DNA of 64,000 bases, from the sequence record OQ790161.1; one strand, given 5' to 3'. The notes under the pieces are model-generated. The model ran no database searches. It was not told the origin of the DNA and saw only the letters and a list, made by a program, of their open reading frames with translations. The position numbers were made by a program, and so were the translations under genes. How positions within the stretch are numbered: the first letter of the stretch is position 1; each line of letters opens with the position of its first letter. Positions 7,388-30,539 of the stretch are shown one piece after another.

Positions 7388-8680
7388 ATGAGTACCCCGA
7401 TGTCCTTGTTCCAGCGCCTGCTGAACTTGGTCGAAACTTCCGCAGAGGCAGCTGGTCTGTACTTTGTAGTTGCCACCGACGAAGGCCTGCGTGCACTGAA
7501 GCTGGAGGAAATCCTCAAGTCAGTTCCTGCTCCCACCTCCACTGTGATCACCCATGAGGTGGTCCGTGAACCGGAGCCGGAAAACCCCTTGCTCCAGCAA
7601 TTGGTCCAGCAGTTGAGCGAGCACAAAGAACAACTGGACCTGCTCTCCGATGAAATCAGCGATGTCCAATCGGATCTGCTCAAGCGGTTGAAGAAAGCGT
7701 CCAAGGAACCCTTCGTTCCCGATGAGTCGGTGAGCCTGGGTCTGGATGCTCTGCGCGATGGCGCAGTGGATGCAGAGAACGTGGCCGTGGGTCTGTGCGC
7801 GGGTGCAGAGTTGGATGGTCAAGGCAATACCCTGATCGGTCCGCATGCTGGCACCGAATGCAAGGGCGTGTTGCGTGATGTCACGGCCGTGGGTTATTCG
7901 GCACTGGCTGAAGCCCAAGACGATCTGACCAACGTCACCGCACTGGGCGCCTACAGCGATGCCACTGGCGACAACCAAGTCATCTTGGGTAACGCCCACA
8001 CCACCACCTACTCCCATTCTGCCCCGCACCGTCGGGCGGACGTGCGCGATATGCATGAGCCGGAAGTGAATTCGCTGGGTCTGGACTTCGTGTTGGGTAT
8101 CCGACCGCTCCAGTACCGCAACGACTTCCGTGAGCTGTACATCGACTGGGAGAACAAGCCGGTCGAACCTGAAGTGCTGCGTCCGGAACCGCAAGCTCCC
8201 ACGTTGGAGTCTGACGATCCGGCCTACCAGCCGTTGCTCATTGCCTACCGCTCCGACAAGGCGCAGTGGGACCGTGAGCATCGTGACTACGTCCTGGCTG
8301 TCCAACAGTTCCATGTCGATCTGACGCAGTGGCTGGAAGACAACAAACTTTCGCGTATCAAGCCCACCGGCGAACACGTCGGTACTCGTACGCACGTCGG
8401 CTTCAACGGAGCCGAACTGCTGGAGCTGTGCGAACGCTTCGGCGTGAACATGGCCTTCGTTCAAGACCACAAGGTCAACGGCGGCAAGGACGTACTGTCC
8501 CTGTCTGATGGTGAAATGGTCGGCGTCCTGTGGACGGCTATCCATGACCTGTACCGGAAGATGACCTCTTCGGAGTTCATCGACGAAATCGCCAGCGCGC
8601 TCTATCAGCGGCACAAAACGATCACTGAGGCCACGCAGGCACAGACGCCTGTGGGGTCTGATTTGCCGGCCCAAGACTGA
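7388..8680 (+). CDS. Tail-fibre/tailspike-related protein with short beta-helix repeats and a degenerate S74 chaperone domain
   Basis: Likely start ATG 7388 (AGGA upstream), 430 aa. GNTLIGPHAG / VTAVGYSA / VTALGAYS repeats are followed by DNQVILGN..TTTY...RADVRDM...LGLDF...IRPLQY...QDHKVNGGKDVLSL, the layout of an S74 domain. Confidence 0.7.
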   Translation: MSTPMSLFQRLLNLVETSAEAAGLYFVVATDEGLRALKLEEILKSVPAPTSTVITHEVVREPEPENPLLQQLVQQLSEHKEQLDLLSDEISDVQSDLLKRLKKASKEPFVPDESVSLGLDALRDGAVDAENVAVGLCAGAELDGQGNTLIGPHAGTECKGVLRDVTAVGYSALAEAQDDLTNVTALGAYSDATGDNQVILGNAHTTTYSHSAPHRRADVRDMHEPEVNSLGLDFVLGIRPLQYRNDFRELYIDWENKPVEPEVLRPEPQAPTLESDDPAYQPLLIAYRSDKAQWDREHRDYVLAVQQFHVDLTQWLEDNKLSRIKPTGEHVGTRTHVGFNGAELLELCERFGVNMAFVQDHKVNGGKDVLSLSDGEMVGVLWTAIHDLYRKMTSSEFIDEIASALYQRHKTITEATQAQTPVGSDLPAQD

Positions 8681-8717
8681 GTATTTTCTTACACCACTTT
8701 GACGAGGCGGATCAGAC

Positions 8718-11700
8718 ATGTCCCTTGTGTTCAAAAGTTTGAGTGGCCTTGAAACCATCAACGCAGGTCAGTTGGCGACCAATCAGCGTATTACGTTGAT
8801 CACCGCTGCCGGGTTGGTGAATGCCACGTGGGGAACTCTCTCCACGGCCATCACCGATCCACTGAACCTGCGTTTGACGGAAGTGGAAGAAGCATTGGCA
8901 GGTGGCGTGTCGGGTCCTTCGATCTGGCCGGCTGCCCGCACGATCTCACTGGCAGGATTGGTCACCGGTTCGGTGGCTCTTGATGGCAGTCAGAATGTTT
9001 CCCTGACCACTTCCATCGCCGATGGTGCACTGGCGCAAGCCAAGGTCACTGGCCTGGTTGCCAAGCTCGATGAGCTGGGCACGGCCACCAACAATCGATG
9101 GGGTACCGGCTACACGCAAGGTTCCTATCCCACTTCCTACACCGGCAATCTCAACTTGCTGGCAGGTGCCACCTATCTCTACACCGCCACCGGTGTGAGC
9201 AACATGCCCGACCCGGTCAGCAACGGTCATTTCATGATCTTGCAGAACGGTCCGCAGAACTACGGTCAACAGCTTGCCCTGCGTAAAGGTGAGGCGTGGG
9301 TGCGTGGTCAGGACTTGGGCGCATGGAGTAGCTGGAACAAACTGTGGACCAGTGCCAATCTGGATCCCACCACGCTGCTGCTCAAGACCGACACTGCGAC
9401 GGCTGCCACCAAGTTGGCAACGCCGCGTGCGTTCTCCCTCACCGGCGTGGTTACCGCATCGGGTGTGGCCTTTGACGGTACTGGCGCAGTTGCCCTGAGC
9501 ACCGCCATTGCCGATAACGCACTGACGATTGCCAAGACTTCTGGTCTGTCGGCAGCACTGGCACTCAAGTTCGATGTCAAGGGTGCGGTTCCGACCAACA
9601 CCCCGTTGAACTCGGTCGGCGCTACGGGTGTCTACGGTCAGAGCACCCCGGCGCAAGTCACCGCAGCCAACAACTATCCGGTTGTGGGTGTATCGGGTGT
9701 GCTGAAGGTCATCCAGCAGACCGGCTTCATCATGCAAGAGTACGTGACCATCACCAACCAGCACTGGCGTCGTATCTACGACGGTAACGGTTGGTCGACG
9801 TGGACGCGTATCTACGGCTCGGTGGACTTTGACCCCAACAACAAGTTCGACAAGAGCGGCGGTGAGATCACCGGTAGCGTGGACGTCAGTGGCGACCTCA
9901 CCGTCCTGCAGACCTTGAACGCGAAGAGCTACTTTGCCAGCACCTTGACCAGTGCGGCGCGGCTGTTCGGTTACCGCGTCCAGCGCGGTGCGGGCAAGAC
10001 CTCGGGTCTGAGTTACGGTCCGGATTACCTGTCGCTTACCACGATCGTTGACAGCACCAGCCAAACCCATGAGTTGAAGATCACCGATTCCGGCAACCTG
10101 CTGTTCAAGGACCTGCCTGTCTATAGTGGTAACAACTTCGATCCTGCCAATCCGGTTCCCACCGGTGGGCTGCTGAACATTGGTGATCCGGGCAGTACCA
10201 ACCTGCGCTTGCGCAAGGACGGTGCTTACTCCATCGATGGCGGTAGCACCTGGGCACAGTTCGGGGGCGTACAAGACGGCACCGATCCGCGCTTCAATAC
10301 GATTCGCATTGGTGCTGACACCGACATCTATCTCTACGAAGACACGCCGGGACAACTGGGGCTTCGTACCGGCAGTAGCGCAGACTATCGCTTCTTCACC
10401 TTCGGTGCTGATGGAAACTTCGGTGTTCCCAACGGTCGAGTCATGATCGCTGGCAATGAGGCTTGGCATGCGGGTAACTTCAACCCAGCAAACAAACTCA
10501 ATGCCACGGCGACTGCGGTGGCAGCGACGAAGCTGGCGACGGCACGGACGATCAACGGCGTAGCCTTTGACGGTACGGCCAACATCACGATCACCGCGCA
10601 GGCCACGTTGCCCGACAGTCCGGTGTTCACTGGCCCGGCACGTTTTGACGTCAACGGTACCAGTACGGCACAGGCTTGGATTCGTGCTGCTGGTACGACA
10701 GGTATCACCATCGATGCGGTCAATGAAGCCAACTCCGCCTATGCGCCGCTGAACTTCCAAGGTACGGTTGTCACCATCAACAACCAAACTGCGTGGCATG
10801 CCGGTAACTTCGACCCGACGTTAAAGGCCAATCTGGCTGGACCGACGTTCACCAGCATCGTTTACTTCGATGTGGACAACGGCAGCACGGCGAAGGCGCG
10901 CTTCTTGCCCTACGGTACCGACGGTATCAACATGGATTCGGTCAGTCATGACGCCTCTGCGTTCGCTCCGTTGAACCTGCGCGGTACGACGGTGACGATC
11001 AATGGTTTCACGCCATGGACCAATTCCAACTTCAACCCGGCAGGTAAGCTGGATGCGCGCGCCGAACTGGCGGCCTCTTGCGCAACGCCTTCGGGCAATG
11101 ACTGGAATAACGCTAACTCCAACGGCTGGTGGATGATGTCGGGCGGTACCAATACGCCTGGCGGGATCAACGACTGGTTCTTGGGTATGGTCACTGTGCA
11201 CAACGGGGATTGGATCCAACAAGAACTCCAGCGTTTCACCGTCGGTAATGAAGTTGCCGGTGCCAAGTGGCGGCGTTGGAAGAAAGCAGGTTCGTGGACG
11301 GCGTGGACGCAAGACCTGATTGTCGGCGGTGCGCTGTCGGCGAACCGCATGGCTGCGGGTTGGGATTCCGGTACCGCCGGTTCGATCTCCTGCTCCAACT
11401 GGTTCCGTACCACCGGTCAGACGGGTATCTACTTCTCCGATTACGGCGGCGGTTGGTACATGACCGACTCCACCTACGTGCGCTCCTACCAGAACAAGGC
11501 AGTGGCGGGCGCGTGGTTCGAAGTCAATGGTCCTGTCCACAGTCCCAACAGTGCAGCCACCAACGCAGCTTTCCGCGCGTTTGGTAACTACGGTGGCGGC
11601 TATGGCATGGTCGACGGCAGTAACCACATCACCATGTACTCTGAGTCGGGGCACTTGTGCTTTGGTTTCGGCGTCAATGGTGTTGCTAAGAAGGCGCAGG

Positions 11701-12065
11701 TCAACAGCGACGGTATCTTCTACGGTACCGACTATGCCATCTACTCGGATCTGTCGCTGAAGACGGAGGTAACTCCGTTCAAGTTCAACGGTCCGCTGGT
11801 GCCGGTGCGTTTCCAATGGATTGACGGCGGCAAGTGGGACTTCGGTTTCATCGCTCAAGACGTCCAAGCGAAATATGCCGAAGCGGTCGAAGTTGATCCG
11901 ACTACTGGTCTGCTGCGCCTGAAGCAAAGTAAGCTCACTGCGGTGTTGGCTGCGCAAGCTAACGCACAAGGCGAGGACATCGAACTGCTCAAGTCTCAAC
12001 TGGGACAAGCACAACGTGACATCGCTGAATTGAAAGAACTGGTTGCCGAACTGCGCAATCGGTAA
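8718..12065 (+). CDS. Tail fibre protein with C-terminal peptidase S74 intramolecular chaperone
   Basis: 1115 aa, Gly/Thr/Asn-rich, with ATKLATxR...FDG repeats, WHAGNFxP repeats and knob-like W-rich segments; ends YSDLSLK...GFIAQDV followed by a coiled coil. Confidence 0.9.
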   Translation: MSLVFKSLSGLETINAGQLATNQRITLITAAGLVNATWGTLSTAITDPLNLRLTEVEEALAGGVSGPSIWPAARTISLAGLVTGSVALDGSQNVSLTTSIADGALAQAKVTGLVAKLDELGTATNNRWGTGYTQGSYPTSYTGNLNLLAGATYLYTATGVSNMPDPVSNGHFMILQNGPQNYGQQLALRKGEAWVRGQDLGAWSSWNKLWTSANLDPTTLLLKTDTATAATKLATPRAFSLTGVVTASGVAFDGTGAVALSTAIADNALTIAKTSGLSAALALKFDVKGAVPTNTPLNSVGATGVYGQSTPAQVTAANNYPVVGVSGVLKVIQQTGFIMQEYVTITNQHWRRIYDGNGWSTWTRIYGSVDFDPNNKFDKSGGEITGSVDVSGDLTVLQTLNAKSYFASTLTSAARLFGYRVQRGAGKTSGLSYGPDYLSLTTIVDSTSQTHELKITDSGNLLFKDLPVYSGNNFDPANPVPTGGLLNIGDPGSTNLRLRKDGAYSIDGGSTWAQFGGVQDGTDPRFNTIRIGADTDIYLYEDTPGQLGLRTGSSADYRFFTFGADGNFGVPNGRVMIAGNEAWHAGNFNPANKLNATATAVAATKLATARTINGVAFDGTANITITAQATLPDSPVFTGPARFDVNGTSTAQAWIRAAGTTGITIDAVNEANSAYAPLNFQGTVVTINNQTAWHAGNFDPTLKANLAGPTFTSIVYFDVDNGSTAKARFLPYGTDGINMDSVSHDASAFAPLNLRGTTVTINGFTPWTNSNFNPAGKLDARAELAASCATPSGNDWNNANSNGWWMMSGGTNTPGGINDWFLGMVTVHNGDWIQQELQRFTVGNEVAGAKWRRWKKAGSWTAWTQDLIVGGALSANRMAAGWDSGTAGSISCSNWFRTTGQTGIYFSDYGGGWYMTDSTYVRSYQNKAVAGAWFEVNGPVHSPNSAATNAAFRAFGNYGGGYGMVDGSNHITMYSESGHLCFGFGVNGVAKKAQVNSDGIFYGTDYAIYSDLSLKTEVTPFKFNGPLVPVRFQWIDGGKWDFGFIAQDVQAKYAEAVEVDPTTGLLRLKQSKLTAVLAAQANAQGEDIELLKSQLGQAQRDIAELKELVAELRNR

Positions 12066-12102
12066 CATAAGCGCCCCCTAGGGAAACCTAGGGGGCACTC
12101 TT
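12066..12102 (+). terminator. Hairpin preceded by CATAAG
   Basis: CATAAGC-GCCCCCTAGG-GAAA-CCTAGGGGGC-ACTCTTT. Confidence 0.7.
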
Positions 12103-12121
12103 TGCGTACAAGGACACAACC

Positions 12122-15100
12122 ATGTTCAAATATCTCAAGCTGGGAGGTCTGGATTTTCTCGAGAATCCGGAAGTAGGCCAGCATGTGACCGTGCGCACTG
12201 GTCCGGGGGACACTGACTTTGTCAATGTCTTCCTCGGTGACTTCCGCACGTTCATGACCGAACAGGTCACTGAGCGCATCGTCGATCTGGAAGAGGCCGT
12301 TGCTGGCGGCACCGGTCCGTCGGTGTGGCCGGTGGCTCGCAGTCTCTCCTTGACCGGGCTGGTAACCGGCACGGTGGCAATGGACGGTTCGCAAAACGTC
12401 TCCTTGGTCACCTCGATGGCCGACGGTGCTTTGAGCATCGCCAAAGTGGACGGACTGCAAGCGGCGCTGGACGGTAAGTTGGCCAGTACCGGTAACGCAG
12501 CAACGGCGACGCGCCTGCAAACGTCTCGCAATATCGCCCTGTCCGGTGTTGTCACCGGTACGGCTTCGTTCAACGGTTCGGCCAATGCCACCATCGCAAC
12601 TTCGATTGCCGATGGGGCGCTCTCCATTGCCAAGACCTCCGGGTTGCAGGCAGCGCTCGATACCAAGGCCAATCTGAGCGGTGCTGACTTCACCGGTCTG
12701 CTCACTGCGCGTGGTCCGGGGCTGGAAGTGTGGGCTGCTGATGGTAACGCCGATGCGGCGCTGAATGTTCGCAATCAGGCTGGGGTGCTCCAAGGCGCGC
12801 TGGCATGGGACCGGGCAACGGACTCGATGCGTTTGCGTCGTGCCTCGACTGACGGTGCTGCTACGGAAGGTGAGTTCGCGCTCTACGGTGATCGCGCAAC
12901 GATCAATGGTAACGTGCTCTACCACGCAGGTAACTTGAATGCGCAAGCGTTGAGTTATCTGTCCTCGGCTGTGACCGAGTATGTCAGTGGAGCGGGTGCT
13001 AACGCCAATGACTTCGCCGCCGGTACCAAAAACCTGGTGCACAACACCAATGCCAATACGCCCGGTGCAAGCTCGGCCTATTGGTACATCGAAACGCTGC
13101 TGACGGGTACCTCCACCAATGTGCTGATCCAACGCGCTTACTCGCCTACCCTCGATGAGCACTACGTGCGTCGTGGCAATGCGGGTGTGTGGTCGGCTTG
13201 GCGTCGTCAGTGGAACAGCTCCAACTTCGATCCGACCAGTAAGCTCGATAGCAATGCCGTGGCTGCATCGGCAACCAAGCTGCAGACGGCCCGTACGATC
13301 GCCCTGACGGGCATCGCCACCGGTACCGTAAGCTTCGATGGTACTGCCAACGTGTCCATCGCCACGAGCGTGGCAGACGGCGCTCTGTCCATTGCCAAGA
13401 CCTCCGGTCTGCAAACGGCACTGGATGGTAAGCTCAACGTGGGTCAGTACGGTCTGGGCACGGCCTCGGCCAACTACAACTGGGCAGTGGAAGTTCGTCA
13501 GTCGCAGTTTGCAGTGGGTACGACTGGTGCGCCGGAGTCGGGCAAGAACTACATGGGCATGCACGTTGTGCTCAGCCATGCCGACTACTATGCCATGGAC
13601 TTGGCAGCGCGCAACAACAAGCTGTGGTTCCAGACCACGGAGCTGGGCGTGTTGGGTACGTGGAATGAGGTTTACCACACCGGTAACTTCACTCCTGCCA
13701 ATTACGTTCCCGTCACCCGTTCAGTGCTGGCAGGCAACGGTATCCTCGATGGCGGTGCGCTCAGTGGTGATGTCACCTTGACGTTGGGTACGCCGACCAC
13801 CTTGAGTGGTTCGACGACCAATGCGGTGACCGCTGGTTCGCACACCCACGCCCTGAGTGCCAACCTGAAGGCCTGGGACGCCATTACCGTGGCTTCCAAG
13901 TTGGACGCAAGCGCTACTGCTGTTGCAGCTGCAAAGCTCGCTACGGCGCGTACGGTGGCTCTGACGGGACCTGTGACGGCCAGTGCGTCCTTTGATGGCT
14001 CGGCAAACCTGACGTTGGCCACTGCGGTGGCGGATGGTGCGTTGGCCATTGCCAAGATCAATGGTCTGCAAGCGGCACTGGACCTGTTGGCTCCCAAGGC
14101 CAACCCGACCTTCACCGGTACGGCACGTCTGCTGGGCGATCTGTTACCTGACGTGGACAATGTCCGTTCGCTGGGTGCACCGAACCTGATGTGGAAGGAC
14201 GTGTACATCGGCCCTGGGTCACTGTACATCAACGGTCAGAAGGTGCTGGAGGATAACTCCGGTACGATTCGCATGTTGGCTGATCCCAATCAGAACATCG
14301 CGATCCAGACCAGTGGTTCGGGCGACATCGAACTGGCTCCCACCGGCACCGGTGTGATTCAGATGAAGGGGACGGTCTCGTTCCTGGGTGGCTCCAAGAT
14401 CCGCTCCTCCAATGGCTCGGCACTGTTGTTCGATGAGGACATCCAGTTCAGCACTGGCACGGGCCTGATCGGTACGCCCACCATCAACGGCAACGTGATT
14501 TACCATGCGGGCAACCTGGACCTGTCCAGTACCTTCCGCATCGGTGCAGCCAATGCTGCTGACCTGCGCTTCTCCTCGGGCGATGGTCGCGGTATTCGCT
14601 TCTGGGATAACGTCAACTACTCGATTTACATGAGTGCCACCACCAATGCAAGTTTGGGTGGGCGCATCGCCGGTGAGACCACGTCTGACCACAACATGTA
14701 TTTCCGCATGGCTGCCGGGACCAACCGCGGCTTTGTGTTTGAGAACGGTTACGCCAACAAGCTGTTTGCCATCAACACCAACGGTGTGCGCTCGACCCCG
14801 TCCATCACGGCACCTTCGTTCATCGGTGCGTTGGAAGGTAATGCCGCCTCGGCCACCAAGCTGGGAACGGCACGCCAGATCTATCTGCAAAACGATCTGA
14901 CGGGTAACGCAGCCTTCGATGGCTCGACGGACATCAGTATCGCCGCCTACGCTCGTGCGTATGTCTCCGGTGGTACGGGTTCGAGTCAGGCTGGTCAGTA
15001 TGTTCGTGTGGCGCGCGCTACCATTGGTGCGCAGTACGAAGATGCGGCCATTGCATTGCAGATGCTCGGCTACAGTGACGCGGCGTCCTACGCTCGCAGT

Positions 15101-19713: not shown

Positions 19714-19757
19714 GCATAGCGTAGAGAGGAGCTTCGGCTCCTCTCTATTTTATGTCC
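19714..19757 (+). terminator. Hairpin with GCATAG / TTTTATGTC flanks
   Basis: GCATAGCG-TAGAGAGGAGC-TTCG-GCTCCTCTCTA-TTTTATGTC. Confidence 0.85.
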
Positions 19758-19775: not shown

Positions 19776-20234
19776 ATGGCTCTTGGCACTAACCCCAGTT
19801 TCTCGCAGATCCGTGCGTTCTTTGGCGGATCCAACAATTTCAAGGACTACTATCGCGGCGGTCCTTACGTTCCCAACATTCCAGCCAACAACGCCATCCC
19901 GACATCGCCGGCCGGCATGTCCATGCGGCAGTTCTCTGGTGCTGACAAGAACGTGAGTGGCCCGTTGAGCGTCACTGCACCTGACGTGTTCAACCAAGTC
20001 AATAACGGTACAGCCTCAGGTTCGTCTGTAGCGAGTGCGTCGGGTGGTGCAGGCGGCTATACCTATACCTGGGCCAACAACAGTGGGGCCACGATGAGTA
20101 CCAATGGTGCAGGCGCCACGTTCTCTGCGACGTCCTCTCGGTCCGGTAGCGCTACGGTCACGGCACGTGACTCCTCGGGAGCTACCGCAACGAGGACGAT
20201 CGTCGTTGAGTTGACGGTGGGGCGCCCTGTTTAA
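19776..20234 (+). CDS. Second putative fibre-tip adhesin, paralog of 18733-19203
   Basis: Likely start ATG 19776 (the track starts at 19752). N-terminus SFSQIRAFFGG..FKDYYRGGPYVPNIP; the last ~91 aa are about 80% identical to those of 18733-19203. Confidence 0.65.
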   Translation: MALGTNPSFSQIRAFFGGSNNFKDYYRGGPYVPNIPANNAIPTSPAGMSMRQFSGADKNVSGPLSVTAPDVFNQVNNGTASGSSVASASGGAGGYTYTWANNSGATMSTNGAGATFSATSSRSGSATVTARDSSGATATRTIVVELTVGRPV

Positions 20235-23008: not shown

Positions 23009-23009
23009 G

Positions 23010-23050: not shown

Positions 23051-23051
23051 T

Positions 23052-23660
23052 TTAGATGGCTTGCAACTGGACGTGCGGTGTCTTCTTCATGGCCTTGGCC
23101 ACCTGCGAGAGGATGGCAGTGGGCTCACGGTAAGTACCGTACTCCTTCATGTACTCCGACTCGATACGACGCTTGGCTTCCATGCGCTTCTTGCTCGGCC
23201 GCCAGCCGAAGATGCCCCAGGCACGCACAGCGGTGAACATGACGCCACGTTCGAACCAATGAACGCCAGCCACCTTCATCGCATCGCGGAAGATATGGTC
23301 AGCTTGCTTGCGGGAGATCTCATACGGGATCTCATCGCGGAACATGGTCTTGGTTTCGCACAGGATGTCATGCAGCACGGCGGCTTGACCGTAGCGGCCC
23401 CACGGTGGCAGGATCCACCACAGCGGCTTGGGCACACTGGCACCGTCAGTCAGGAAGCCAGCCGGCACGTAGCCCCACACGTTGCGTTCTGCTTCGCTGA
23501 GGTAGTACCGGAAGGATTTGGTGACCTTGAAGTAGGTCTTCCCCAACACTTTGGAGGCCACCTCATCTTTCTCCACCGACAAGTCGGTATCGAAGTTGGT
23601 GAACGCCTCAGCTTCCTTGAGCAAGGTCGCCGTGGGGACATACGGGGTGTTGATGATCAT
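23052..23660 (-). CDS. DUF1353-family protein
   Basis: Likely start ATG 23660, 202 aa; VPAGFLTDGASVPKPLWWILPPWGRYGQAAVLHDILC...ADHIF..AM signature. Confidence 0.85.
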   Translation of the reverse strand: MIINTPYVPTATLLKEAEAFTNFDTDLSVEKDEVASKVLGKTYFKVTKSFRYYLSEAERNVWGYVPAGFLTDGASVPKPLWWILPPWGRYGQAAVLHDILCETKTMFRDEIPYEISRKQADHIFRDAMKVAGVHWFERGVMFTAVRAWGIFGWRPSKKRMEAKRRIESEYMKEYGTYREPTAILSQVAKAMKKTPHVQLQAI

Positions 23661-23685
23661 TGAATGCTCCACGGAATAAAAGAAC

Positions 23686-23707
23686 CGGGGGAGGTTGCCC
23701 TCCCCCG
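23686..23707 (-). terminator. Hairpin downstream of the Hint-domain gene
   Basis: CGGGGGAGG-TTGC-CCTCCCCCG, with T-rich sequence following on the minus strand. Confidence 0.7.
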
Positions 23708-23718
23708 ATACGGTGCAG

Positions 23719-25053
23719 TTATGCCAGCTGCTTCTGGTTGGACATGTTGTGCGTTGCGATACGACGATCGCCGCGCTCACCAGCGAAGTAACTCTGGTCA
23801 TCCACGTTGAATAGGACCACGTCACGCACACCGACGAACTCGATGAAGCGTACCGGCTCCCAACGCAACTCGCCTTGGTCGTTGACGAAGACGTCTTCGT
23901 TGAGCATCTCCGGTCCGAACATCTTGCACGAGCCATCGCGCATGGTCATCGGGGTGGACTCCGACGCCACGATCGAAATACCCGACTCGGTGGTCAGACG
24001 GTAGCACGGTTGCGGCATCACTGCATTGGCACGAACCTGACGCGGAACCATCGTGTCGGGGTTGTAAGCCGACCCGTCGATCCAATCGTCAATGGCAATG
24101 TCCGATGCCAACCGCTCATCGTCCATGTACATCGTCGTGGCCACGCAGCCGCCACCACCACCACCGCCTCCGCCCCCTCCGCCACCACCGCCTCCGCCAC
24201 CACCCGATTCGGGCGTGATGATGTCCAGATCACAGAACTCGCAGTTCATGTTGAACAGGTAACGGAAGTTGGCGACCACGTTGCCATTGCGCTTGATCAA
24301 CACGCGGAACCAGCCGCGGTTGTAAATACGCAACACTGCATTGGGATCGCGGTAGGCCGAGTTGTTAGCCAAGGTGGTCATGTCAAGCGTCAGGTCCAAC
24401 GCACGGTCGGTGTTGACCGGCATGTCGTTACCTGCGCCAGCCACAGAGGTGTTGGAGTTGTTGAACTGACCGGGCACGCCCGGCTGCCACGACCACGTCG
24501 CCGGATTGGCCGGCTTGGGGATCCACCAACGTCCGTTCTCCTGGGTTTCCAGTTGATAGGAGATGGTGTATGCGTCGCCGAAGTCGCCGCGCGGAGACTG
24601 GGCCCAGTTACCCGAAGCGACCGTGCGGCCTTCCGGATACAGGTAACCCAGCTGACCGCCGCCGGAGCGCACCACACGTGCGGTGAAGTTACGGGTGGAC
24701 TGCCAGATGTCCCAGGTGCCGTTACGACGGAACGTCAAGACCACACGCTGGATGCAGTGGGCCACGTGCCACTGGGTAGAAGGACAGGTCGACCACGGAC
24801 CGTCGTAGGTACCGATGTCACCCATCGGCTGGGTGTAAGAGACCGTGCCCTTACCTGCCCAGTAGTTGGCCAAGTCCGTACCGTTGCTGTCGTAGTGCCC
24901 CACATCGCCAATGCGCGACCCCGCCGAAAGCGGGGCGTAGCGCAACTGCTGTCCATCGGGGCGGAAGAATCCGCCCGCTTGGGGACCGCCTTCATCTTGC
25001 TCGAAGATGTCGTCGAAGTCCTGCCCGGCGCCGTTGTAGAAATAGGTGGTCAT
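23719..25053 (-). CDS. Putative fibre-tip protein with G19 linker and C-terminal Hint (intein-like) domain
   Basis: 444 aa. N-terminal DFDDIF...RYAPLSAGSRIGDVG...DLANYWAGKGT module, a W-rich middle domain, 19 Gly (24148-24204), then a 134 aa domain from CVATT to ATHN with QPCYRLTTESG and GVRDVVLFNV, followed by MSNQKQLA. Confidence 0.8.
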   Translation of the reverse strand: MTTYFYNGAGQDFDDIFEQDEGGPQAGGFFRPDGQQLRYAPLSAGSRIGDVGHYDSNGTDLANYWAGKGTVSYTQPMGDIGTYDGPWSTCPSTQWHVAHCIQRVVLTFRRNGTWDIWQSTRNFTARVVRSGGGQLGYLYPEGRTVASGNWAQSPRGDFGDAYTISYQLETQENGRWWIPKPANPATWSWQPGVPGQFNNSNTSVAGAGNDMPVNTDRALDLTLDMTTLANNSAYRDPNAVLRIYNRGWFRVLIKRNGNVVANFRYLFNMNCEFCDLDIITPESGGGGGGGGGGGGGGGGGGGCVATTMYMDDERLASDIAIDDWIDGSAYNPDTMVPRQVRANAVMPQPCYRLTTESGISIVASESTPMTMRDGSCKMFGPEMLNEDVFVNDQGELRWEPVRFIEFVGVRDVVLFNVDDQSYFAGERGDRRIATHNMSNQKQLA

Positions 25054-25063
25054 GGTAACCTCC

Positions 25064-27142
25064 TTATTTGCTTTCCAGCGCGGCCAGACGAACCAGCAGC
25101 GATTGGATCAGGTCATCTTGCTGAGCGACCTTTTCGTGCAGCGCATCCACTTCCTGACCGGCCTTGTAGGCCATCTCGAAAGCAGCACCGGTGTTGTTCA
25201 CCGCCAGACGCTTGCACTTACGGCGACCGATACCATGGTCGTACTCGATGACCAGATCCGGAGCCACACGTTGCATGTCCTGTGCCACCGGACCGTGCTG
25301 CTTCTCACCAGTGTCCTTCATCTCCCACTGCTTGTAGTCGAAACTACGCCAGAGGGGACGAGCGTCCAGCTTACGGATACCGGTCTTCAGGCGCTTGTCC
25401 GAGGGCTGGAAACCAGCGCCGGCAATTGCACGGCCGTTGTGGACCACGTAGTTACCGCTGGCCTGGAACTGGAAGTAACGCGAACCAGCCACACGCAGCG
25501 AGATCGAACCATCACCGTCCTGATACAGGTAGCCGCTGTTGCCGATGACCAGTGTGTTCAGCTGGGCGTTGGAACCAACCACCACACGCTGATCGATCTG
25601 AGCCTGCAACGGATTGACCGCACGCGCCTGCACCAACTGCGCGGTGCGCAGCGGGGTCATGTACACGGTGTTGGCCCCGCCACCTTCAGCGTCGCCTTGC
25701 GAGGCGATGCCGTAGTTCTGCACGTTACCCAGATTCACCTGTGCGGCAGTGGTGCCGTGCGGGTTGTTGGTATTGTTGATGTGGCCGTTGATCGAGTTGG
25801 TCAGTGGCGTCACAGCCTGGGCGGTGATCGCTTCCTTGGTCCGCAGCGGCGTCATGTACGTCGCATTGTCCGCACCGGCCTGTGCCTGCGCCGTCGAGGC
25901 AATACCGTAGTTCTCCACGTTGCCCAGGTTGACCTGTGCTTTGGTGGTACCGTGAGGATTGTTGGTATTGTTGATGTGCGCGGTGAACTGCGAACCCACA
26001 GCACTGTCGATCAGCGACTTGGTGGTCGCCGGCGTCATGAACAGGTTCGTGGCCGTGCCAGCTTGCGCTTGGGCCGTGGTGGCCGTCAGGAAGTTGTCCA
26101 CGTTGCCGAGCTGGACTTGGGCCTTGGTCGTGTTATGCGGATTGTCCTGACGAGCAATGTGCGCATTCAACGGAGCCAGTGCCAGCGCCGTGATTGCAGC
26201 ACCGGTGAGGGTAGCAGTCATGTACGCTTCACCCACGCCGGCCTGTGCCTGAGCGGTGGTGGCCAGACCATAGTTGACCACGCTGCCCAACTGAACCTGG
26301 GCTTTGGTCACGCCATGGGGATTGTCGACACGCGCGATGTGCGCGTTCAGCGGAGTGACCGCCTGGAAGGTGATCGCTTCTTTGGTACGCAACGCGGTCA
26401 TGTAGACGTTGTTGGCCGTACCAGCCGTGGCTTGCGCCGTGGTTGCGATCCCGTAGTTTTCCACCGACCCCAGCAGCACTTGGGCCTTGGTGACCTGGTG
26501 CGGGTTGCTGACGTTGTTGATGTGGTCGTTGATCTGCGAGTCCAGCGAGGTGATCAGTGCGCGCAGCTCATTGTCCTTGAGGTCAATGTACTGACGCAAT
26601 TCATCGAACGCTGCCTGGTCGCCCAGCAAGATCGCACGACGGATCTGTTCCAACACGGCCACGAGATACTCGAAGCCGTAGAGGTCACCGATGTCATGCA
26701 AGTGAGCGGTGGGCGGGAAGTACTCGGGAGCACCGATCAGATCGCCCCAGTACACGGTGCGGTTGTCCAGATCCAGACCTTCGATCATGTCCTCGATCGA
26801 GGACACCGAAGCGGAGTAGGTACCACCGATGGCCTGGTAGTCGATCTCGATGTCCGTGGCCCGGCATTCGGGCAGGATGATCACGACCGAACAGATTTCC
26901 TGACCAGCACGCAGCGAGGCTTCGAGGAACATGTGGACCGGACGGTAATCCACGTCCGGTACCAGCACTGCGCTGGTGACCTTGTTGCGGACGACCATCC
27001 CACGGGTGTAGAACGGACCACGAGTGGTCACGAAAGCTCGGGTTCCGGTAGCTGCAACAACGTGCAGCTCAGCGGTCACCTTATTGGTGACCGCAGTACC
27101 GGAGAGATCGAGCGGGAGTTGAATTACGGGAGGGGTACTCAT
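25064..27142 (-). CDS. phiKZ-type tail fibre (gp145/146-like N-terminus) with five ~61-aa NPH repeats and C-terminal S74
   Basis: LPLDLSG...N.V..E.H...GPFY...DYQAIGG N-terminus; NPHxxTKAQVxLG repeats; PSDKRLK...GPVAQD. Confidence 0.85.
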   Translation of the reverse strand: MSTPPVIQLPLDLSGTAVTNKVTAELHVVAATGTRAFVTTRGPFYTRGMVVRNKVTSAVLVPDVDYRPVHMFLEASLRAGQEICSVVIILPECRATDIEIDYQAIGGTYSASVSSIEDMIEGLDLDNRTVYWGDLIGAPEYFPPTAHLHDIGDLYGFEYLVAVLEQIRRAILLGDQAAFDELRQYIDLKDNELRALITSLDSQINDHINNVSNPHQVTKAQVLLGSVENYGIATTAQATAGTANNVYMTALRTKEAITFQAVTPLNAHIARVDNPHGVTKAQVQLGSVVNYGLATTAQAQAGVGEAYMTATLTGAAITALALAPLNAHIARQDNPHNTTKAQVQLGNVDNFLTATTAQAQAGTATNLFMTPATTKSLIDSAVGSQFTAHINNTNNPHGTTKAQVNLGNVENYGIASTAQAQAGADNATYMTPLRTKEAITAQAVTPLTNSINGHINNTNNPHGTTAAQVNLGNVQNYGIASQGDAEGGGANTVYMTPLRTAQLVQARAVNPLQAQIDQRVVVGSNAQLNTLVIGNSGYLYQDGDGSISLRVAGSRYFQFQASGNYVVHNGRAIAGAGFQPSDKRLKTGIRKLDARPLWRSFDYKQWEMKDTGEKQHGPVAQDMQRVAPDLVIEYDHGIGRRKCKRLAVNNTGAAFEMAYKAGQEVDALHEKVAQQDDLIQSLLVRLAALESK
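25590..26524 (-). repeat. Five ~61-aa HxxxxxNPHxxTxAQVxLGxVxN repeats
   Basis: Read directly from the translation of 25064-27142. Confidence 0.9.
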
Positions 27143-27173
27143 AACCCGCTTGCTCCTAGTTGCTTGATTGGGA

Positions 27174-30100
27174 TTAGGTCGTCACGACCGTCGGGTTCTC
27201 ACGGCTGTACGCCTCGACCAAGATCGGGCGGAGACGGCCGTTGCGCTGGGACTGATACATCACACCGTTCCAGTCGCTGAAGTACAGACGGTTGGGGCGA
27301 ACCAGCGGGTTGTTGAGACCCAGGTAGGTCATTTCCCACGCCGAGCCGTTGTAACGGTAGAAGCGCTGCTTGTCGTTGTCGGCGGCGATGCCCGTACGGA
27401 CATAGTCACGGTAACGACGCGGACGGGTCAGCACCTTGAAGGTGACCTTGGGCTGACGCACGGAGATCACACCCCACGTGGTGGGACGATCCACCAGCGG
27501 TGCCAGGGCCGGAACAGCAGTCAGGTCGATCACCACGCGAGCGGTGGTCGGGTAGGTGGTTGCACCGAACTCGGACACGTCCACCGTGATGATGCTGCCT
27601 GCACGCACAGCCTTGATGCGGACCTTGCCGGCGGTGTTCCAACCGTTGCCCGCGTCCACGAAGGTTGCCGGGTCACGTGCATCGTTGGGCACATCCGTGT
27701 CGGACCACATCAGCGAGCCGTTCTTGGAACCCAGGTCCACGCCATCGGCTTGACCGATGTGGAGTGCGACCGTGTGCAGCTTGTAGGCGAAGCTGGAGGG
27801 TACGCCTTGGACCTTGGTCAGGCCGCCGGGGGTACGCACCACAGCGATCGATACCGGACGGTTGGCGATCGTTGCCGAAGCCACGATGACACCTGCGCCG
27901 TTAGCCTTCAGATCCGTCGAGCTCAGCTCCACCTCGATGGTGTAGTTCAGCGATGCTTCGTTGGCCAGCAGCATTGCGTTGCCATCCACCGTGTCGGTGT
28001 CCAGCAAGATGCCGGCGTTGGTTGCATCCCAGCCCCACTTGTCCAGGATCGGCAAGTCGTTGTAGAGCCAGTTGGAACCTTGTGCCGAATACGGAATGAA
28101 GCTACCGTAATCCTCACGCAGGTTCTGCTCGATCGCCTGGACCTCGGTCTCTTCCGCAGCCGAACTGGCCACCGACACCCACTCCACCAGCGAACCGTTG
28201 AGCTGCTCAGCGTTCTGCGTGTTGGGCAGTTCACCGTAGGGCAGATCACCGAAGTACGCACGCTGACGCGCGTAGGGCGGCAGGTTGATGGTGAGGTAGT
28301 TGATACCGGTCGGTTCAGCGTCCAGCACCGTATTGGTGTTGGTGAAGAACTTATCGCCTTGCGAGACAGCGGCCACCGAGATGGGCTGACGACCCGACGG
28401 GCCACGTGCGAAGACCTTCAGTTCCGTACCGCCGGAGACCGGAGCGGTGGTGTAGCCGAAGCTGACCACGCGGCTGTAGTTCTCCACTTGTGCAACGACG
28501 GTGGAGAAGGACAGGTTTCGCAGAGCGATACGCAGCTGGAAGGACGGGGAGGCGCCATCGAAGGCCGACTCACCACCGGTCACATTGGCGACCAGATCCG
28601 GCAGAGGGTTGGTGGCGATGTTGGCGGGGATGACCATCGTACCCAACAGGGTCCACGTGTCGGTCGCACCGGCCACCGGGGACGGATACACTTCCACGCT
28701 CTTGGCATTGCCGATCACTTCAGCGTAGGTCTTGCCATCGAGCTTGCTCGAGTCAGCAGCCTTGGCCGTGCTGCCCAGCTTGCCTGCCAGTGCGGTGTCC
28801 ACCTGTGCGGTGGTGTAAGCGCCGACCTGTGCAGCCGTGGTGTTGTGCGGATTGCTCGTGCTGGCGGCGTGCTGCGCGTAGGCATCACCCACCAGAGCCA
28901 TCACCGCTGCCTTCGTACCGGCCGGGGTCACGTACAGGTTACTGGCCGTACCGGTCACGGTCTGGGCATTGGTTGCCGTGCCGTAGTTGTTGACCGAACC
29001 CAGCTGCACCTGATCCTTGGTCACTTCGTGCGGGTTGGCCAGATCGGCCTTGTGCGCATTCAGTGCCGCCGTGGCATCACCGCCGCCACCACCGCCGAGG
29101 GCATCGAACAACGCCTTGGTGGTTGCCGGGGTCATGAACAGGTTGGTCGCCGTACCGGCAGTTGCCTGCTGAACGGTCGCCGTGGAGAAGTTATCCACGT
29201 TACCCAACTGCACTTGCGCCTTGGTGGTGCCGTGCGGGTTGGAGCTGTTGTTCAAGTGCGACTGCAACGAGTTCCCCACCAGCGCGGTGATCGCTTGCGC
29301 GGTGCGCAGGGGCGTCATGTAGCGGTTGGCGGCGGTACCGGCTTCCGCTTCAGCTTGGGAGGCGATGCTGTAGTTCTGCACACTGCCCAGCTGGATCTGC
29401 GCGGCCGTCACGTTGTGCGGGTTGGCCATGTTGTCGATGTGCTCGGTCACGCCTTGCAGCGCGATGGCAGTGATCGCTTCACGGGTCATGGCCGGAGTCA
29501 TGTACAGCTCGTTGCTGGTACCTGCACGAGCCGCCACGACATCGGCGATACCGTAGTTGAGTACGCTACCCAGTTGGACCTGTGCCTTGGTCACGGCGTG
29601 CGGGTTGTCCACACGCGCGATGTGCGCGTCCAGACGAACGCCCACCAGTGCCTGGATGGCATTGGCCGTACGGACCGGAGTCATGTAACGGTTGTTGGCC
29701 GTACCCGCTTCCGCTTCGGCCTGCGTGGCCGGGGCGTAGTTCTCCACCGAGCCCAACTGAACCTGAGCCTTGGTGGTGTTGTGCGGGTTGTTGCTGTTGT
29801 TGACGTGCGAGTCCAGCGCATTGCCGATCAGGGCTTGGACCAGCTGTGCACCACGCAGCACCGTGAGGTACTTGGTTGCACTGGTACCAGCCTGGGCTTC
29901 GGCCACGGTGGCCACGCCGTAGTTCTCGACGTTGCCGAGATTGACCTGCGCCTTGGTGACTTGGTGCGGGTTGCCCTTGTCTGCGATGTGCTGCAGCAGG
30001 CCACCTTCACCGGAGGCAATCAGGGCGTCACGGATGCCTTCCAGCACTTCCACGACTTCCTTCATGCCCACCATGTCATCCAGGTGCCAGTCGTGATCGA

Positions 30101-30539
30101 TCGGCGGGAAGGCATAGGGAAGATCCGCGACCTGTTCCCAGGTGACGCGGCGGGGGTTGACCAGCTTGTTGGACAAGATCTCGACGATCTTCTGCGAGTT
30201 CAGGGTCCAGTCGCCGCCCAGCGTCTGGTACTCCATGCGCACAGCGCCGGTGAGGCGGTTGTCGAAGAAGGTGATCGAACCGTAAATCGGCTTGGCACAG
30301 GCCAGAGAAGCATCGTGGAACAGATGCGTCGGCATGTAGTCAACGCCCTCAACGAGCGAACGCTGACTCGGCAGATGCACGATCTTCATCGACTCGGCGA
30401 AGAAGGGCGTCGCCTGAGGGATGATGTAAAGGAACTCGGACAACTCCGGTGGGGAGATGGTCTGATGCTCCGCCGTGATTTTGTTCGAAGCCAGCGTGCC
30501 GCTGGGATCGAACGGATACGCAATGGTTGCGTTGCTCAT
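27174..30539 (-). CDS. phiKZ-type tail fibre (gp145/146-like) with six full NPH repeats plus one partial
   Basis: YPFDPSG...NKI..E...PFF...EGVDY...YQTLGG...V.WEQV..LP..FPP..H N-terminus; no S74 at the C-terminus. Confidence 0.85.
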   Translation of the reverse strand: MSNATIAYPFDPSGTLASNKITAEHQTISPPELSEFLYIIPQATPFFAESMKIVHLPSQRSLVEGVDYMPTHLFHDASLACAKPIYGSITFFDNRLTGAVRMEYQTLGGDWTLNSQKIVEILSNKLVNPRRVTWEQVADLPYAFPPIDHDWHLDDMVGMKEVVEVLEGIRDALIASGEGGLLQHIADKGNPHQVTKAQVNLGNVENYGVATVAEAQAGTSATKYLTVLRGAQLVQALIGNALDSHVNNSNNPHNTTKAQVQLGSVENYAPATQAEAEAGTANNRYMTPVRTANAIQALVGVRLDAHIARVDNPHAVTKAQVQLGSVLNYGIADVVAARAGTSNELYMTPAMTREAITAIALQGVTEHIDNMANPHNVTAAQIQLGSVQNYSIASQAEAEAGTAANRYMTPLRTAQAITALVGNSLQSHLNNSSNPHGTTKAQVQLGNVDNFSTATVQQATAGTATNLFMTPATTKALFDALGGGGGGDATAALNAHKADLANPHEVTKDQVQLGSVNNYGTATNAQTVTGTASNLYVTPAGTKAAVMALVGDAYAQHAASTSNPHNTTAAQVGAYTTAQVDTALAGKLGSTAKAADSSKLDGKTYAEVIGNAKSVEVYPSPVAGATDTWTLLGTMVIPANIATNPLPDLVANVTGGESAFDGASPSFQLRIALRNLSFSTVVAQVENYSRVVSFGYTTAPVSGGTELKVFARGPSGRQPISVAAVSQGDKFFTNTNTVLDAEPTGINYLTINLPPYARQRAYFGDLPYGELPNTQNAEQLNGSLVEWVSVASSAAEETEVQAIEQNLREDYGSFIPYSAQGSNWLYNDLPILDKWGWDATNAGILLDTDTVDGNAMLLANEASLNYTIEVELSSTDLKANGAGVIVASATIANRPVSIAVVRTPGGLTKVQGVPSSFAYKLHTVALHIGQADGVDLGSKNGSLMWSDTDVPNDARDPATFVDAGNGWNTAGKVRIKAVRAGSIITVDVSEFGATTYPTTARVVIDLTAVPALAPLVDRPTTWGVISVRQPKVTFKVLTRPRRYRDYVRTGIAADNDKQRFYRYNGSAWEMTYLGLNNPLVRPNRLYFSDWNGVMYQSQRNGRLRPILVEAYSRENPTVVTT
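28820..29990 (-). repeat. Six full plus one partial ~61-aa NPH repeats
   Basis: Read directly from the translation of 27174-30539. Confidence 0.9.

What the first reader, a model, noticed from the sequence alone, without database searches (positions are those of the whole stretch)
7388..30539. Matched set: three cleavable-S74 fibres and three small tip proteins, suggesting a multi-receptor arsenal
Seen: fibres 8718, 12122 and 27142(-) each end in an intact SDxxLK chaperone. There are also three small tip-like genes (18733, 19776, 25053(-)), two of them directly after their fibre. The fibre at 30539(-) lacks S74 and the one at 7388 has a degenerate S74. Known: in T-even systems, removal of the fibre C-terminus allows a separate adhesin (gp38) to cap the fibre. 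Inference: each fibre is capped by its own tip, with the 19776 protein possibly serving the 8718 fibre in trans, giving at least three parallel adsorption devices.
Basis: partly seen in the sequence, partly recalled or inferred. Interest (0 to 1): 0.65.

Follow-up and report, generated by a model that had tools for sequence, protein, structure and literature searches.

The report
Phage tail fibres with partner proteins
A giant Xanthomonas phage carries three self-trimming tail fibres; two are paired with small proteins from a widespread, unstudied family whose gene nearly always directly follows such a fibre gene, and the third is paired with a different protein that ends in an intein-like self-cutting domain.

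Summary
The window is Xanthomonas jumbo phage RTH11, 100% identical. The three fibres at 8718, 12122 and 27142(-) do end in intact Peptidase_S74 chaperones with the SDxxLK dyad. The fibre at 30539(-) has none. The S74 remnant at 7388 is plausible but not significant.

The three "tips" are two different things. The proteins at 18733 and 19776 are paralogs: a conserved 60-residue N-terminal motif plus an Ig-like domain. This motif family (phrog_30374, function unknown) is large. In 35 of 37 IMG/VR loci, and in 12 of 13 cultured-phage lineages checked, its gene follows an S74 fibre gene, usually with overlapping stop and start codons. In a 272-kb relative, an 8718-type fibre end is directly followed by a 19776-type protein.

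The gene at 25053(-) encodes 444 residues and is unrelated to the other two. It has a beta-sandwich domain, a 19-glycine run and a C-terminal Hint (intein/hedgehog) fold with invariant Cys1 and terminal His-Asn. It sits in a conserved cassette: fibre A, S74 fibre B, this protein, DUF1353.

The analogy to T2/S16 gp37-gp38 is apt, but there is no homology to gp38. Physical capping of the fibre tip remains inferred.

The parts
7388..8680 (+). 430-aa fibre-like protein (WJJ55129). Its C-terminal part may be a non-catalytic remnant of an S74 chaperone.
   Evidence: phrog_4636 'tail spike protein' E=6e-39. No Pfam S74. My own HMM gives E=0.078. The homolog in L056 matches the S74 HMM at E=2e-6.
8718..12065 (+). 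1115-aa fibre. S74 intramolecular chaperone from residue 1010 (DNA about 11745-12065), motif SDLSLK. Its N-terminal 117 residues are paralogous to those of the next fibre.
   Evidence: Pfam PF13884 29.8 bits against a cut-off of 22; motif; 50% identity over residues 4-117 to the 12122 fibre.
12122..18733 (+). 2203-aa fibre. S74 chaperone from residue 2087 (DNA about 18380-18733), motif SDERLK. The domain just before the cleavage site is shared with fibres of Stenotrophomonas T7-like, BUDD and DLP6 phages.
   Evidence: Pfam PF13884 28.7 bits; shared pre-cleavage sequence.
18733..19203 (+). Small protein 1 (156 aa): conserved N-terminal motif (residues 1-60) plus an Ig-like domain (68-152). Its start overlaps the fibre's stop codon (TAATG).
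   Evidence: Homologs and alignment; AF2 model pLDDT 87; Ig/Rib/PKD fold hits; weak hit to the T5 decoration protein Ig domain; junction; phrog_30374, function unknown.
19276..19707 (+). 143-aa protein of unknown function, lying between the two small proteins and conserved in the jumbo-phage relatives.
   Evidence: phrog_25696; homologs only in L055-L059. Resemblance to the DLP6/BUDD intervening protein is not supported (hhalign 7.7%).
19721..19748 (+). Terminator-like hairpin (12-bp stem followed by a T run) between the 19276 gene and small protein 2.
   Evidence: This is a consensus match only.
19776..20234 (+). Small protein 2 (152 aa): a paralog of small protein 1 with a variant N-terminal motif and a very similar (about 80% identical) Ig-like domain. 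No fibre gene lies directly upstream.
   Evidence: 66% identity to small protein 1; N-motif HMM E=7e-26. Proteins of this type follow 8718-type fibre ends in L055.
23052..23660 (-). 202-aa DUF1353 protein, annotated 'tail assembly chaperone'. It is the last gene of the minus-strand cassette.
   Evidence: Pfam PF07087 E=2e-25; phrog_1158. The same position is kept in L008, L017, L055 and L056. The DUF1353 founding member TtaP is a phospholipase A2 (PMC11525133).
23684..23709 (-). Terminator-like hairpin between the 444-aa gene and the DUF1353 gene.
   Evidence: This is a consensus match only.
23719..25053 (-). 444-aa protein X. It has an N-terminal region and beta-sandwich (residues 1-283, DNA 24205-25053), a 19-Gly run (284-302, DNA 24148-24204) and a Hint-fold module (303-444, DNA 23722-24147) that begins with Cys303 and carries T-H-N at residues 434-436, followed by an 8-residue tail.
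   Evidence: Translation; homolog alignments; AF2 model; Foldseek hits to inteins, BIL domains and hedgehog, probability 1.0, TM 0.7-0.83; BFVD Hint proteins.
25064..27142 (-). 692-aa fibre B. S74 chaperone from residue 581 (DNA about 25064-25402), motif SDKRLK. Its N-terminal 500 residues are paralogous to fibre A.
   Evidence: Pfam PF13884 37.1 bits; motif; 39% identity over 543 residues to fibre A.
27174..30539 (-). 1121-aa fibre A, without an S74 domain.
   Evidence: No Pfam S74; not reported by my S74 HMM at E<=10; phrog_13857 'tail protein' E=4e-177.

Best explanation
The region holds two separate fibre modules of phage RTH11.

Module 1 (plus strand) has two paralogous fibres, 8718 and 12122. 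Each is folded by a C-terminal S74 chaperone that then cuts itself off. The two small proteins, 18733 and 19776, belong to a large uncharacterised family. Its members have an N-terminal motif of about 60 residues, always at the very start of the protein, followed by a variable C-terminal domain, which here is Ig-like.

I propose that this motif docks on the end of the fibre that S74 cleavage exposes. The Ig-like domain would then become the outermost part of the fibre and add a surface-binding element, probably for glycans. On this reading, 18733 serves the 12122 fibre in cis and 19776 serves the 8718 fibre in trans. This works like gp38 on gp37 in T2/S16-type phages, but the protein is unrelated to gp38.

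Module 2 (minus strand) is a conserved cassette: fibre A (no S74), fibre B (S74), protein X, DUF1353. X is not a small tip protein. It is a beta-sandwich protein that carries its own removable C-terminus, a poly-Gly linker followed by a Hint domain. That domain most likely cleaves at the Gly-Cys junction.

Shown here: the domains, the folds, the conserved residues and the gene linkage.
Inferred: the cleavages, the docking, presence in the virion and any role in adsorption.
For: S74 domains and the dyad.

Linkage of N-motif genes to S74 fibres:
- 35 of 37 IMG/VR loci have an S74 ORF upstream on the same strand. In 27 of them the stop/start gap is -4 to +3 nt.
- The same holds in Stenotrophomonas T7-like elements and in L004.
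- It also holds in JC1, ST4, Itty13, BUDD and DLP6, and in phiXF1, Rb1, OC, YL1, Dolphis and BUCTxx99.

Features of the motif family:
- The motif sits at residue 1 in essentially all short hits among the 150 best of 7309.
- The anchor is conserved while the C-terminus varies: Ig-like, several Ig domains, or Gly-rich.
- Motif subtype follows fibre-end type. In L055, an 8718-type end (60% identity, E=2e-148) is followed by a 19776-type protein. 12122-type ends are followed by 18733-type proteins in L056, the T7-likes, BUDD and DLP6.
- Pairwise identity of the motif tracks the pre-cleavage tip (Spearman rho 0.52) more than the chaperone (0.35). This is not corrected for phylogeny.

Precedent: S16 gp37 chaperone cleavage exposes the gp38 docking site (PMC7917993).

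Protein X:
- Hint fold.
- Cys1, His and Asn are invariant across homologs fused to at least four unrelated N-terminal parts.
- A natural homolog, P0004, stops exactly before the poly-Gly run.
- The X N-domain is present in 7 of 7 loci where fibre B has S74, and absent in the 2 loci where it does not.
Against: - There is no direct evidence that any of these proteins is in the virion.
- JC1 virion proteomics detected neither its S74 fibre gp59 nor its N-motif protein gp60.
- In Vibrio Straboviridae, which account for most of the cultured-phage hits, the N-motif gene lies among non-structural genes with no S74 within 6 kb.
- Two IMG/VR loci have no S74.
- Relative L056 has three N-motif genes for two plus-strand S74 fibres, so the counts are not strictly matched.
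- A terminator-like hairpin separates 19776 from the fibre operon.
- A conserved N-terminus with a variable C-terminus also fits modular tail-fibre assembly chaperones.
- For X, the Hint assignment rests on fold and end motifs. Only 1 of 15 homologs gives even a weak Pfam Hint hit (E=0.061). The module has no second invariant His where inteins have the block-B His.
- The N-domain of the X model has low confidence.
Confidence: 0.5

Rival explanations
1. The small N-motif proteins are assembly factors, not virion parts. They would bind the nascent fibre end or the S74 chaperone during folding or cleavage and be released afterwards, like Tfa-type chaperones or the 'transient chaperone caps' described for Alteromonas phages.
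For: - The tight translational coupling to the fibre gene fits a co-folding partner equally well.
- A conserved N-terminus with a variable C-terminus is the layout of modular fibre chaperones (my own knowledge of Mu/P2 Tfa proteins).
- JC1 gp60 is absent from the virion proteome.
- The one feature shared by all partner fibres is the S74 domain itself.
Against: - These fibres already carry their own chaperone.
- An Ig-like domain, or chains of 3-5 Ig domains, is typical of exposed virion decoration and not of chaperones.
- Neither small protein (18733 or 19776) matches a tail-fibre-assembly family in Pfam or PHROGs; NCBIfam was run on 18733 only.
- In JC1 the fibre itself was also undetected, so that proteome is uninformative.
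Confidence: 0.2
2. The small proteins are fibre or virion decoration proteins of the Hoc or T5 pb10 kind. They would bind somewhere on the fibre shaft or elsewhere and give weak, non-essential adherence. They would not cap the cleaved tip, and there would be no one-to-one pairing with fibres.
For: - The best sequence match of the C-terminal domain is the Ig-like domain of the T5 decoration protein (E=0.012).
- There is a weak PHROG hit to Hoc-like decoration.
- The two RTH11 paralogs have very similar Ig-like domains (about 80% identical), which argues against two different receptor specificities.
- N-motif gene counts do not strictly match fibre counts in L056.
Against: - Position directly after S74 fibres in many unrelated phage types.
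- Co-variation of motif subtype with fibre-end type.
- Both point to the fibre's C-terminal region as the partner, not to the capsid or the shaft.
Confidence: 0.15
3. The Hint module of protein X is a decayed intein-like remnant with no activity. X would then act as an uncleaved 444-aa structural or accessory protein.
For: - No Pfam Hint hit for the RTH11 protein.
- No second invariant His in the module.
- The residue after the terminal Asn is not a nucleophile, so splicing is excluded.
Against: - Cys1 and the terminal Thr-His-Asn are invariant across homologs with only 28-36% overall identity and unrelated N-terminal parts.
- The module is the best-conserved part of these proteins.
- A Gly run always precedes the Cys.
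- One homolog ends exactly where cleavage would occur.
Confidence: 0.12

Closest known systems
T2/S16-type long tail fibre tip: gp37 with a C-terminal S74-type intramolecular chaperone, plus the gp38 adhesin
   Same: - The fibre gene ends in a self-cleaving chaperone with an S-D-x-x-hydrophobic-K site, and the partner gene follows directly.
- The partner has a conserved N-terminal attachment part and a variable distal part.
- Cleavage is what exposes the docking surface (PMC7917993).
   Different: - No sequence or fold similarity to gp38 was found.
- The N-terminal motif is a different, short, Gly/Tyr/Pro-rich element.
- The distal domain in RTH11 is Ig-like, not a polyglycine sandwich.
- The family spans podo-, sipho-, myo- and jumbo-phage types.
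- Docking has not been shown.
Endosialidase / T5 pb1 type C-terminal intramolecular chaperone (Peptidase_S74, PF13884)
   Same: Three RTH11 fibres carry the domain above Pfam's threshold, with the Ser/Lys motif intact.
   Different: To my knowledge, the classical examples have no dedicated downstream partner gene. Here two of the three fibres appear to have one, and the third has protein X.
Bacterial intein-like (BIL) and hedgehog-type Hint autoprocessing domains
   Same: - The C-terminal module of X has the Hint fold (TM 0.7-0.83 to gp41-1 intein, BIL2, Clostridium thermocellum BIL and hedgehog).
- It starts with Cys after a Gly and carries His-Asn at its C-terminal end, before a short tail.
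- Like BIL and hedgehog domains, it sits at the C-terminal end of the protein and cannot splice, because there is no +1 nucleophile.
   Different: - No significant Pfam Hint match.
- No conserved block-B His.
- It is preceded by a Gly run of 7 to 19 residues.
- It is found on phage fibre-locus proteins with at least four different N-terminal parts.
Ig-like decoration proteins (T4 Hoc, T5 pb10)
   Same: A small anchor domain plus an exposed Ig-like domain. There is weak sequence similarity to the pb10 Ig domain.
   Different: The anchor motif is unrelated, and the gene is linked to fibre genes, not head genes.

Membership tests
Peptidase_S74 intramolecular chaperone (fibres 8718, 12122, 27142c) | Match to PF13884 above the gathering score | tested here: met
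   29.8, 28.7 and 37.1 bits against a cut-off of 22.
Peptidase_S74 intramolecular chaperone (fibres 8718, 12122, 27142c) | Catalytic Ser and Lys five residues apart (S-D-x-x-hydrophobic-K) at the start of the domain | tested here: met
   SDLSLK at residue 1010, SDERLK at 2087 and SDKRLK at 581.
Peptidase_S74 intramolecular chaperone (fibres 8718, 12122, 27142c) | Autocleavage and release after trimerisation | not testable with these tools
   This needs protein-level data.
Peptidase_S74 (fibre 7388, claimed to be degenerate) | Detectable S74 domain | tested here: inconclusive
   No Pfam hit at E<=10. My own HMM gives E=0.078. The homolog in L056 gives E=2e-6 over the distal part of the model only. 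No Ser/Lys motif in either protein.
gp38 tail fibre adhesin (Pfam family GP38; S16 gp38, PDB 6F45) | Sequence or fold homology to gp38 | tested here: not met
   No Pfam hit for 18733 or 19776, nor for the N-terminal piece at E<=10. No gp38 chain in the PDB sequence search at E<=10, nor among the 50 Foldseek matches listed.
gp38 tail fibre adhesin (Pfam family GP38; S16 gp38, PDB 6F45) | Gene directly downstream of a fibre gene that ends in a cleavable chaperone | tested here: met
   for 18733 and the family. Not met for 19776, which lies two genes away.
gp38 tail fibre adhesin (Pfam family GP38; S16 gp38, PDB 6F45) | Bound to the fibre tip in the virion and determines the receptor | not testable with these tools
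   No structure or proteome was available for RTH11 or a close relative.
Hint superfamily (intein / BIL / hedgehog), for residues 303-444 of protein X | Hint fold | tested here: met
   Foldseek against PDB: 49 intein, BIL or hedgehog hits, probability 1.0, target TM up to 0.83. Module pLDDT is 70-90.
Hint superfamily (intein / BIL / hedgehog), for residues 303-444 of protein X | Nucleophilic Cys/Ser at position 1 and His-Asn at the C-terminal end | tested here: met
   C303, H435 and N436 are present in at least 90% of the homologs in the 15-sequence alignment (the remainder is the Hint-less P0004) and are invariant in the 4-sequence module alignment.
Hint superfamily (intein / BIL / hedgehog), for residues 303-444 of protein X | Block-B Thr-x-x-His | tested here: not met
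   The only invariant His of the module is the penultimate one.
Hint superfamily (intein / BIL / hedgehog), for residues 303-444 of protein X | Significant match to a Pfam Hint model | tested here: not met
   0 hits for the RTH11 protein. One of 15 homologs hits at E=0.061.
Splicing intein | Cys/Ser/Thr directly after the terminal Asn, and a C-extein to ligate | tested here: not met
   The next residue is Met, Ala or Val, followed by 2-8 residues to the stop.
Tail fibre assembly chaperones (Tfa / Caudo_TAP type) | Match to a known chaperone family | tested here: not met
   None found for 18733 (Pfam, PHROGs, NCBIfam), 19776 (Pfam, PHROGs) or X (Pfam, PHROGs, NCBIfam). Only the DUF1353 gene carries a 'tail assembly chaperone' PHROG label.

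The most novel reading that the evidence does not exclude
The poly-Gly plus Hint module of protein X may be more than a disposable C-terminus. It could act as a ligation device, like hedgehog or the Tetrahymena BIL/BUBL proteins. In that case it would form a Gly thioester at the Gly-Cys junction, and a nucleophile on the fibre would resolve it. The beta-sandwich domain would then be covalently attached to the virion. Separately, the N-motif family would be a general plug-in tip system for S74 fibres, used by many phage types.
Probability: 0.1. Interest if true: 0.85.

Novelty: new variant of a known kind. Interest (0 to 1): 0.6.

Why it matters
Receptor-binding parts decide which bacteria a phage can attach to. 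Automated annotation reads S74 fibres as complete receptor-binding proteins.

If the N-motif family really caps such fibres, many phages carry an unannotated outermost component. These include phages of Xanthomonas, Stenotrophomonas, Burkholderia, Ralstonia, Pseudomonas and Aeromonas. Every record I saw calls the protein 'hypothetical', apart from a few Vibrio phage records that label it 'cell wall mannoprotein'. Host-recognition predictions based on the fibre alone would then be incomplete.

The family would also be a second, independent case of the 'cleave the chaperone, then dock a tip protein' logic, so far known from T2/S16-type phages.

A Hint domain used as a removable or reactive C-terminus on fibre-locus proteins is, as far as I could find, undescribed.

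Tried and rejected
- Sequence searches of protein X and of its Hint piece against Pfam, NCBIfam and the PDB gave only poly-Gly artefacts or nothing. The fold search was what identified the domain.
- I tested whether X's own N-terminus is a divergent copy of the small-protein motif. It is not (hhalign 0.2%). The N-termini of the Hint-bearing homologs P0011-P0013 are (97.9%).
- I tested whether the 19276 protein is the same family as the small gene lying between fibre and N-motif gene in BUDD, DLP6, Rb1 and BUCTxx99. This is not supported: jackhmmer found nothing and hhalign gave 7.7%.
- The first related-loci run, with the broad alignment, failed for lack of a conserved stretch. A narrower alignment worked.
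- The Hint module is rare in IMG/VR: 3 loci, all close relatives.
- No paper on RTH11 was found, and none describing this gene pair. The JC1 proteome was uninformative.
- The correlation of motif identity with tip against chaperone is not corrected for shared ancestry and is only suggestive.
- An earlier reading, that relative L055 has one small protein for two fibres, was wrong. An HMM scan shows two N-motif genes there.

These were a generic intein block pattern with an intein-like example, and a half-remembered version of the N-terminal motif. None was entered into a tool or used as evidence.
Full report
**Identity and gene map**

The region is 100% identical to Xanthomonas phage RTH11 (OQ790161.1), a 312-kb jumbo phage. 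Window coordinate equals record coordinate minus 186000.

Plus strand:
- 7388-8680: 430 aa
- 8718-12065: 1115 aa
- 12122-18733: 2203 aa
- 18733-19203: 156 aa
- 19276-19707: 143 aa
- 19776-20234: 152 aa
- 20362-20886: DUF7941

Minus strand, converging on the above:
- 30539-27174: 1121 aa
- 27142-25064: 692 aa
- 25053-23719: 444 aa
- 23660-23052: DUF1353

**Checking the observation**

Pfam finds Peptidase_S74 above threshold in the 1115-, 2203- and 692-aa fibres and nowhere else. Each has the Ser/Lys motif: SDLSLK, SDERLK and SDKRLK. A six-frame scan of the whole window with HMMs built here finds exactly three S74 domains, two N-motif genes and one Hint module. The 1121-aa fibre has no S74.

The 430-aa protein gives no significant S74 signal in RTH11. 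Its 46%-identical homolog in a 327-kb relative matches the distal part of my S74 model (E=2e-6 in a small search). Both lack the Ser and Lys at the expected position. A decayed S74 is therefore plausible but unproven.

The fibres form two paralogous pairs. 8718 and 12122 share their first 117 residues. 27142(-) and 30539(-) share about 500 N-terminal residues.

**The two small proteins**

18733 and 19776 are paralogs, 66% identical. Each has a conserved N-terminal motif of about 60 residues and a C-terminal Ig-like domain.
- The AF2 model has pLDDT 87.
- Fold matches are to Rib, PKD and I-set Ig domains.
- The best sequence match is the Ig domain of the T5 decoration protein (E=0.012).
- The stop codon of the 12122 fibre overlaps the start of 18733 (TAATG). 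GenBank's later start at 18769 would cut off conserved motif residues.
- The family corresponds to phrog_30374, function unknown.

A profile search of 1.84 billion representatives gave 7309 hits. Many are long Ig-repeat proteins, but roughly 100 of the best 150 are proteins of 150-260 aa with the motif starting at residue 1. Some carry 3-5 Ig domains or Gly-rich C-termini instead.

**Gene linkage, the main new result**

Homologs of the small protein sit directly after an S74 fibre in:
- Stenotrophomonas T7-like elements (L002, L003, L005, L006) and an unknown phage (L004);
- Burkholderia JC1, Aeromonas ST4 and Pseudomonas Itty13;
- Xanthomonas phiXF1, Ochrobactrum OC, Ralstonia YL1, Pseudomonas Dolphis and Stenotrophomonas BUCTxx99;
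- BUDD, DLP6 and Rb1, with one small gene in between.

In an IMG/VR scan, 35 of 37 loci have an S74 ORF upstream on the same strand. In 27 of them the stop/start gap is -4 to +3 nt. About a dozen distinct lineages are represented.

The exceptions are two IMG/VR loci and the Vibrio Straboviridae. In the Vibrio phages the motif is fused to a Ser/Thr-rich tail and lies among non-structural genes.

**Pairing of small proteins with fibres**

The domain just before the cleavage site of the 12122 fibre is shared with the Stenotrophomonas T7-likes, BUDD, DLP6 and L056. All of these are followed by 18733-type proteins.

In the 272-kb relative L055, the long fibre's last 330 residues are 60% identical to those of 8718 (E=2e-148). 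The protein that follows it, 44 nt later, has the 19776-type N-terminus.

RTH11 has two N-motif genes in its whole genome for two plus-strand S74 fibres. L055 has two for two. L056 has three for two. The match in numbers is therefore frequent but not strict.

Across 24 pairs, motif identity correlates with pre-cleavage tip identity (rho 0.52) more than with chaperone identity (rho 0.35). This is uncorrected for ancestry and only suggestive.

**The third 'tip'**

The 25053(-) gene encodes 444 residues and is unrelated to the small proteins. It has three parts:
- a poorly modelled N-terminus and a beta-sandwich (residues 1-283);
- 19 consecutive glycines;
- a 142-residue module that begins with Cys303 and carries Thr-His-Asn at residues 434-436, followed by an 8-residue tail.

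Sequence searches were blind to this module. The AF2 model of the module (pLDDT 70-90) matches inteins, bacterial intein-like domains and the hedgehog autoprocessing domain, with probability 1.0 and target TM up to 0.83. It also matches phage 'Hint domain' proteins in BFVD.

The fourteen homolog clusters show the following:
- The module is the best-conserved part.
- It is always preceded by a Gly run.
- Cys1 and His-Asn are invariant.
- It is fused to at least four unrelated N-terminal parts. One of these is a fibre-like N-terminus. Another (P0011-P0013) is the small-protein N-motif itself (hhalign 97.9%).
- One natural homolog (P0004) ends exactly before the Gly run.
- The residue after Asn is not a nucleophile, so this is not a splicing intein.
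- The canonical block-B His is not conserved.

The most economical reading is autocleavage at the Gly-Cys junction, that is, a second kind of removable C-terminus.

**The minus-strand cassette**

The order is a ~414-aa gene on the opposite strand, then fibre A, fibre B, X and DUF1353. It recurs in L008/L009, L017, L056 and L057-L059.

The X N-domain occurs in all seven loci where fibre B has S74. It is missing in the two loci where fibre B lacks it (L055 and L016). L016 instead has a different N-domain on the same Hint module.

**Mechanism and comparison**

The literature precedent is accurate. [quoted passage not shown]

The RTH11 arrangement has the same logic, but it is not a member of the gp38 family: there is no Pfam, PDB sequence or fold match. 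An assembly-chaperone role and a plain decoration role remain open.

The one virion proteome available for a phage with such a pair (JC1) detected neither partner.

**Verdict**

However, the 'matched set of three' is really two members of a widespread, uncharacterised family that accompanies S74 fibres, plus one Hint-bearing protein of another kind.

The gene linkage, the folds and the conserved residues are shown here. Cleavage, docking and any role in adsorption are inferred.

Noticed in passing
window 23052-23660 (-): The DUF1353 protein is labelled 'tail assembly chaperone' (phrog_1158). The founding characterised member of that family, TtaP, is a phospholipase A2 (PMC11525133), and the RTH11 protein contains a His-Asp pair inside the domain. 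It may be a lipid-cleaving enzyme and not a chaperone.
   Followed up: partly
window 18733 vs 18769: GenBank starts WJJ55132 at 18769. All homologs keep 12 more conserved N-terminal residues, which puts the start at 18733, overlapping the fibre's stop codon (TAATG).
   Followed up: yes
window 19721-19748 (+), 23684-23709 (-), 31932-31959 (+): Three strong intergenic terminator-like hairpins (11-12 bp stems followed by a T run). One separates small protein 2 from the fibre operon and one separates DUF1353 from protein X. The overall count of terminator-like sites is not above the shuffled expectation.
   Followed up: no
L012 5600-6001, L013 5590-5997, L062 5563-5997, L066 6509-6940: A second small protein family (133-145 aa, 'AAY80_074-like') lies next to the N-motif gene, either before or after it, in BUDD, DLP6, Rb1 and BUCTxx99. 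It is not detectably related to the RTH11 19276 protein.
   Followed up: partly
L060 6001-6534 (Vibrio phage 6E35.1a) and about 35 related Vibrio phage records: Here the N-terminal motif is fused to a Ser/Thr-rich low-complexity tail ('cell wall mannoprotein'). The gene lies among queuosine and NAD genes with no fibre nearby. This is an exception to the linkage rule.
   Followed up: partly
L056 11438-12064, L055 10457-11056: Relatives of RTH11 carry an extra N-motif protein of 190-192 aa after the 19776-type gene, and in L056 also an 83-aa Phage_tail_APC gene after it. RTH11 lacks the extra N-motif gene (HMM scan); I saw no APC gene at that position in RTH11 but did not test for one.
   Followed up: no
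window 24148-24204 (-): The 19-Gly run is encoded by mixed GGN codons, not a homopolymer. Its length varies from about 7 to 19 residues among homologs.
   Followed up: no
window 21956-22504 (+): A gene annotated as a Holliday junction resolvase sits between the two fibre modules, among structural genes.
   Followed up: no
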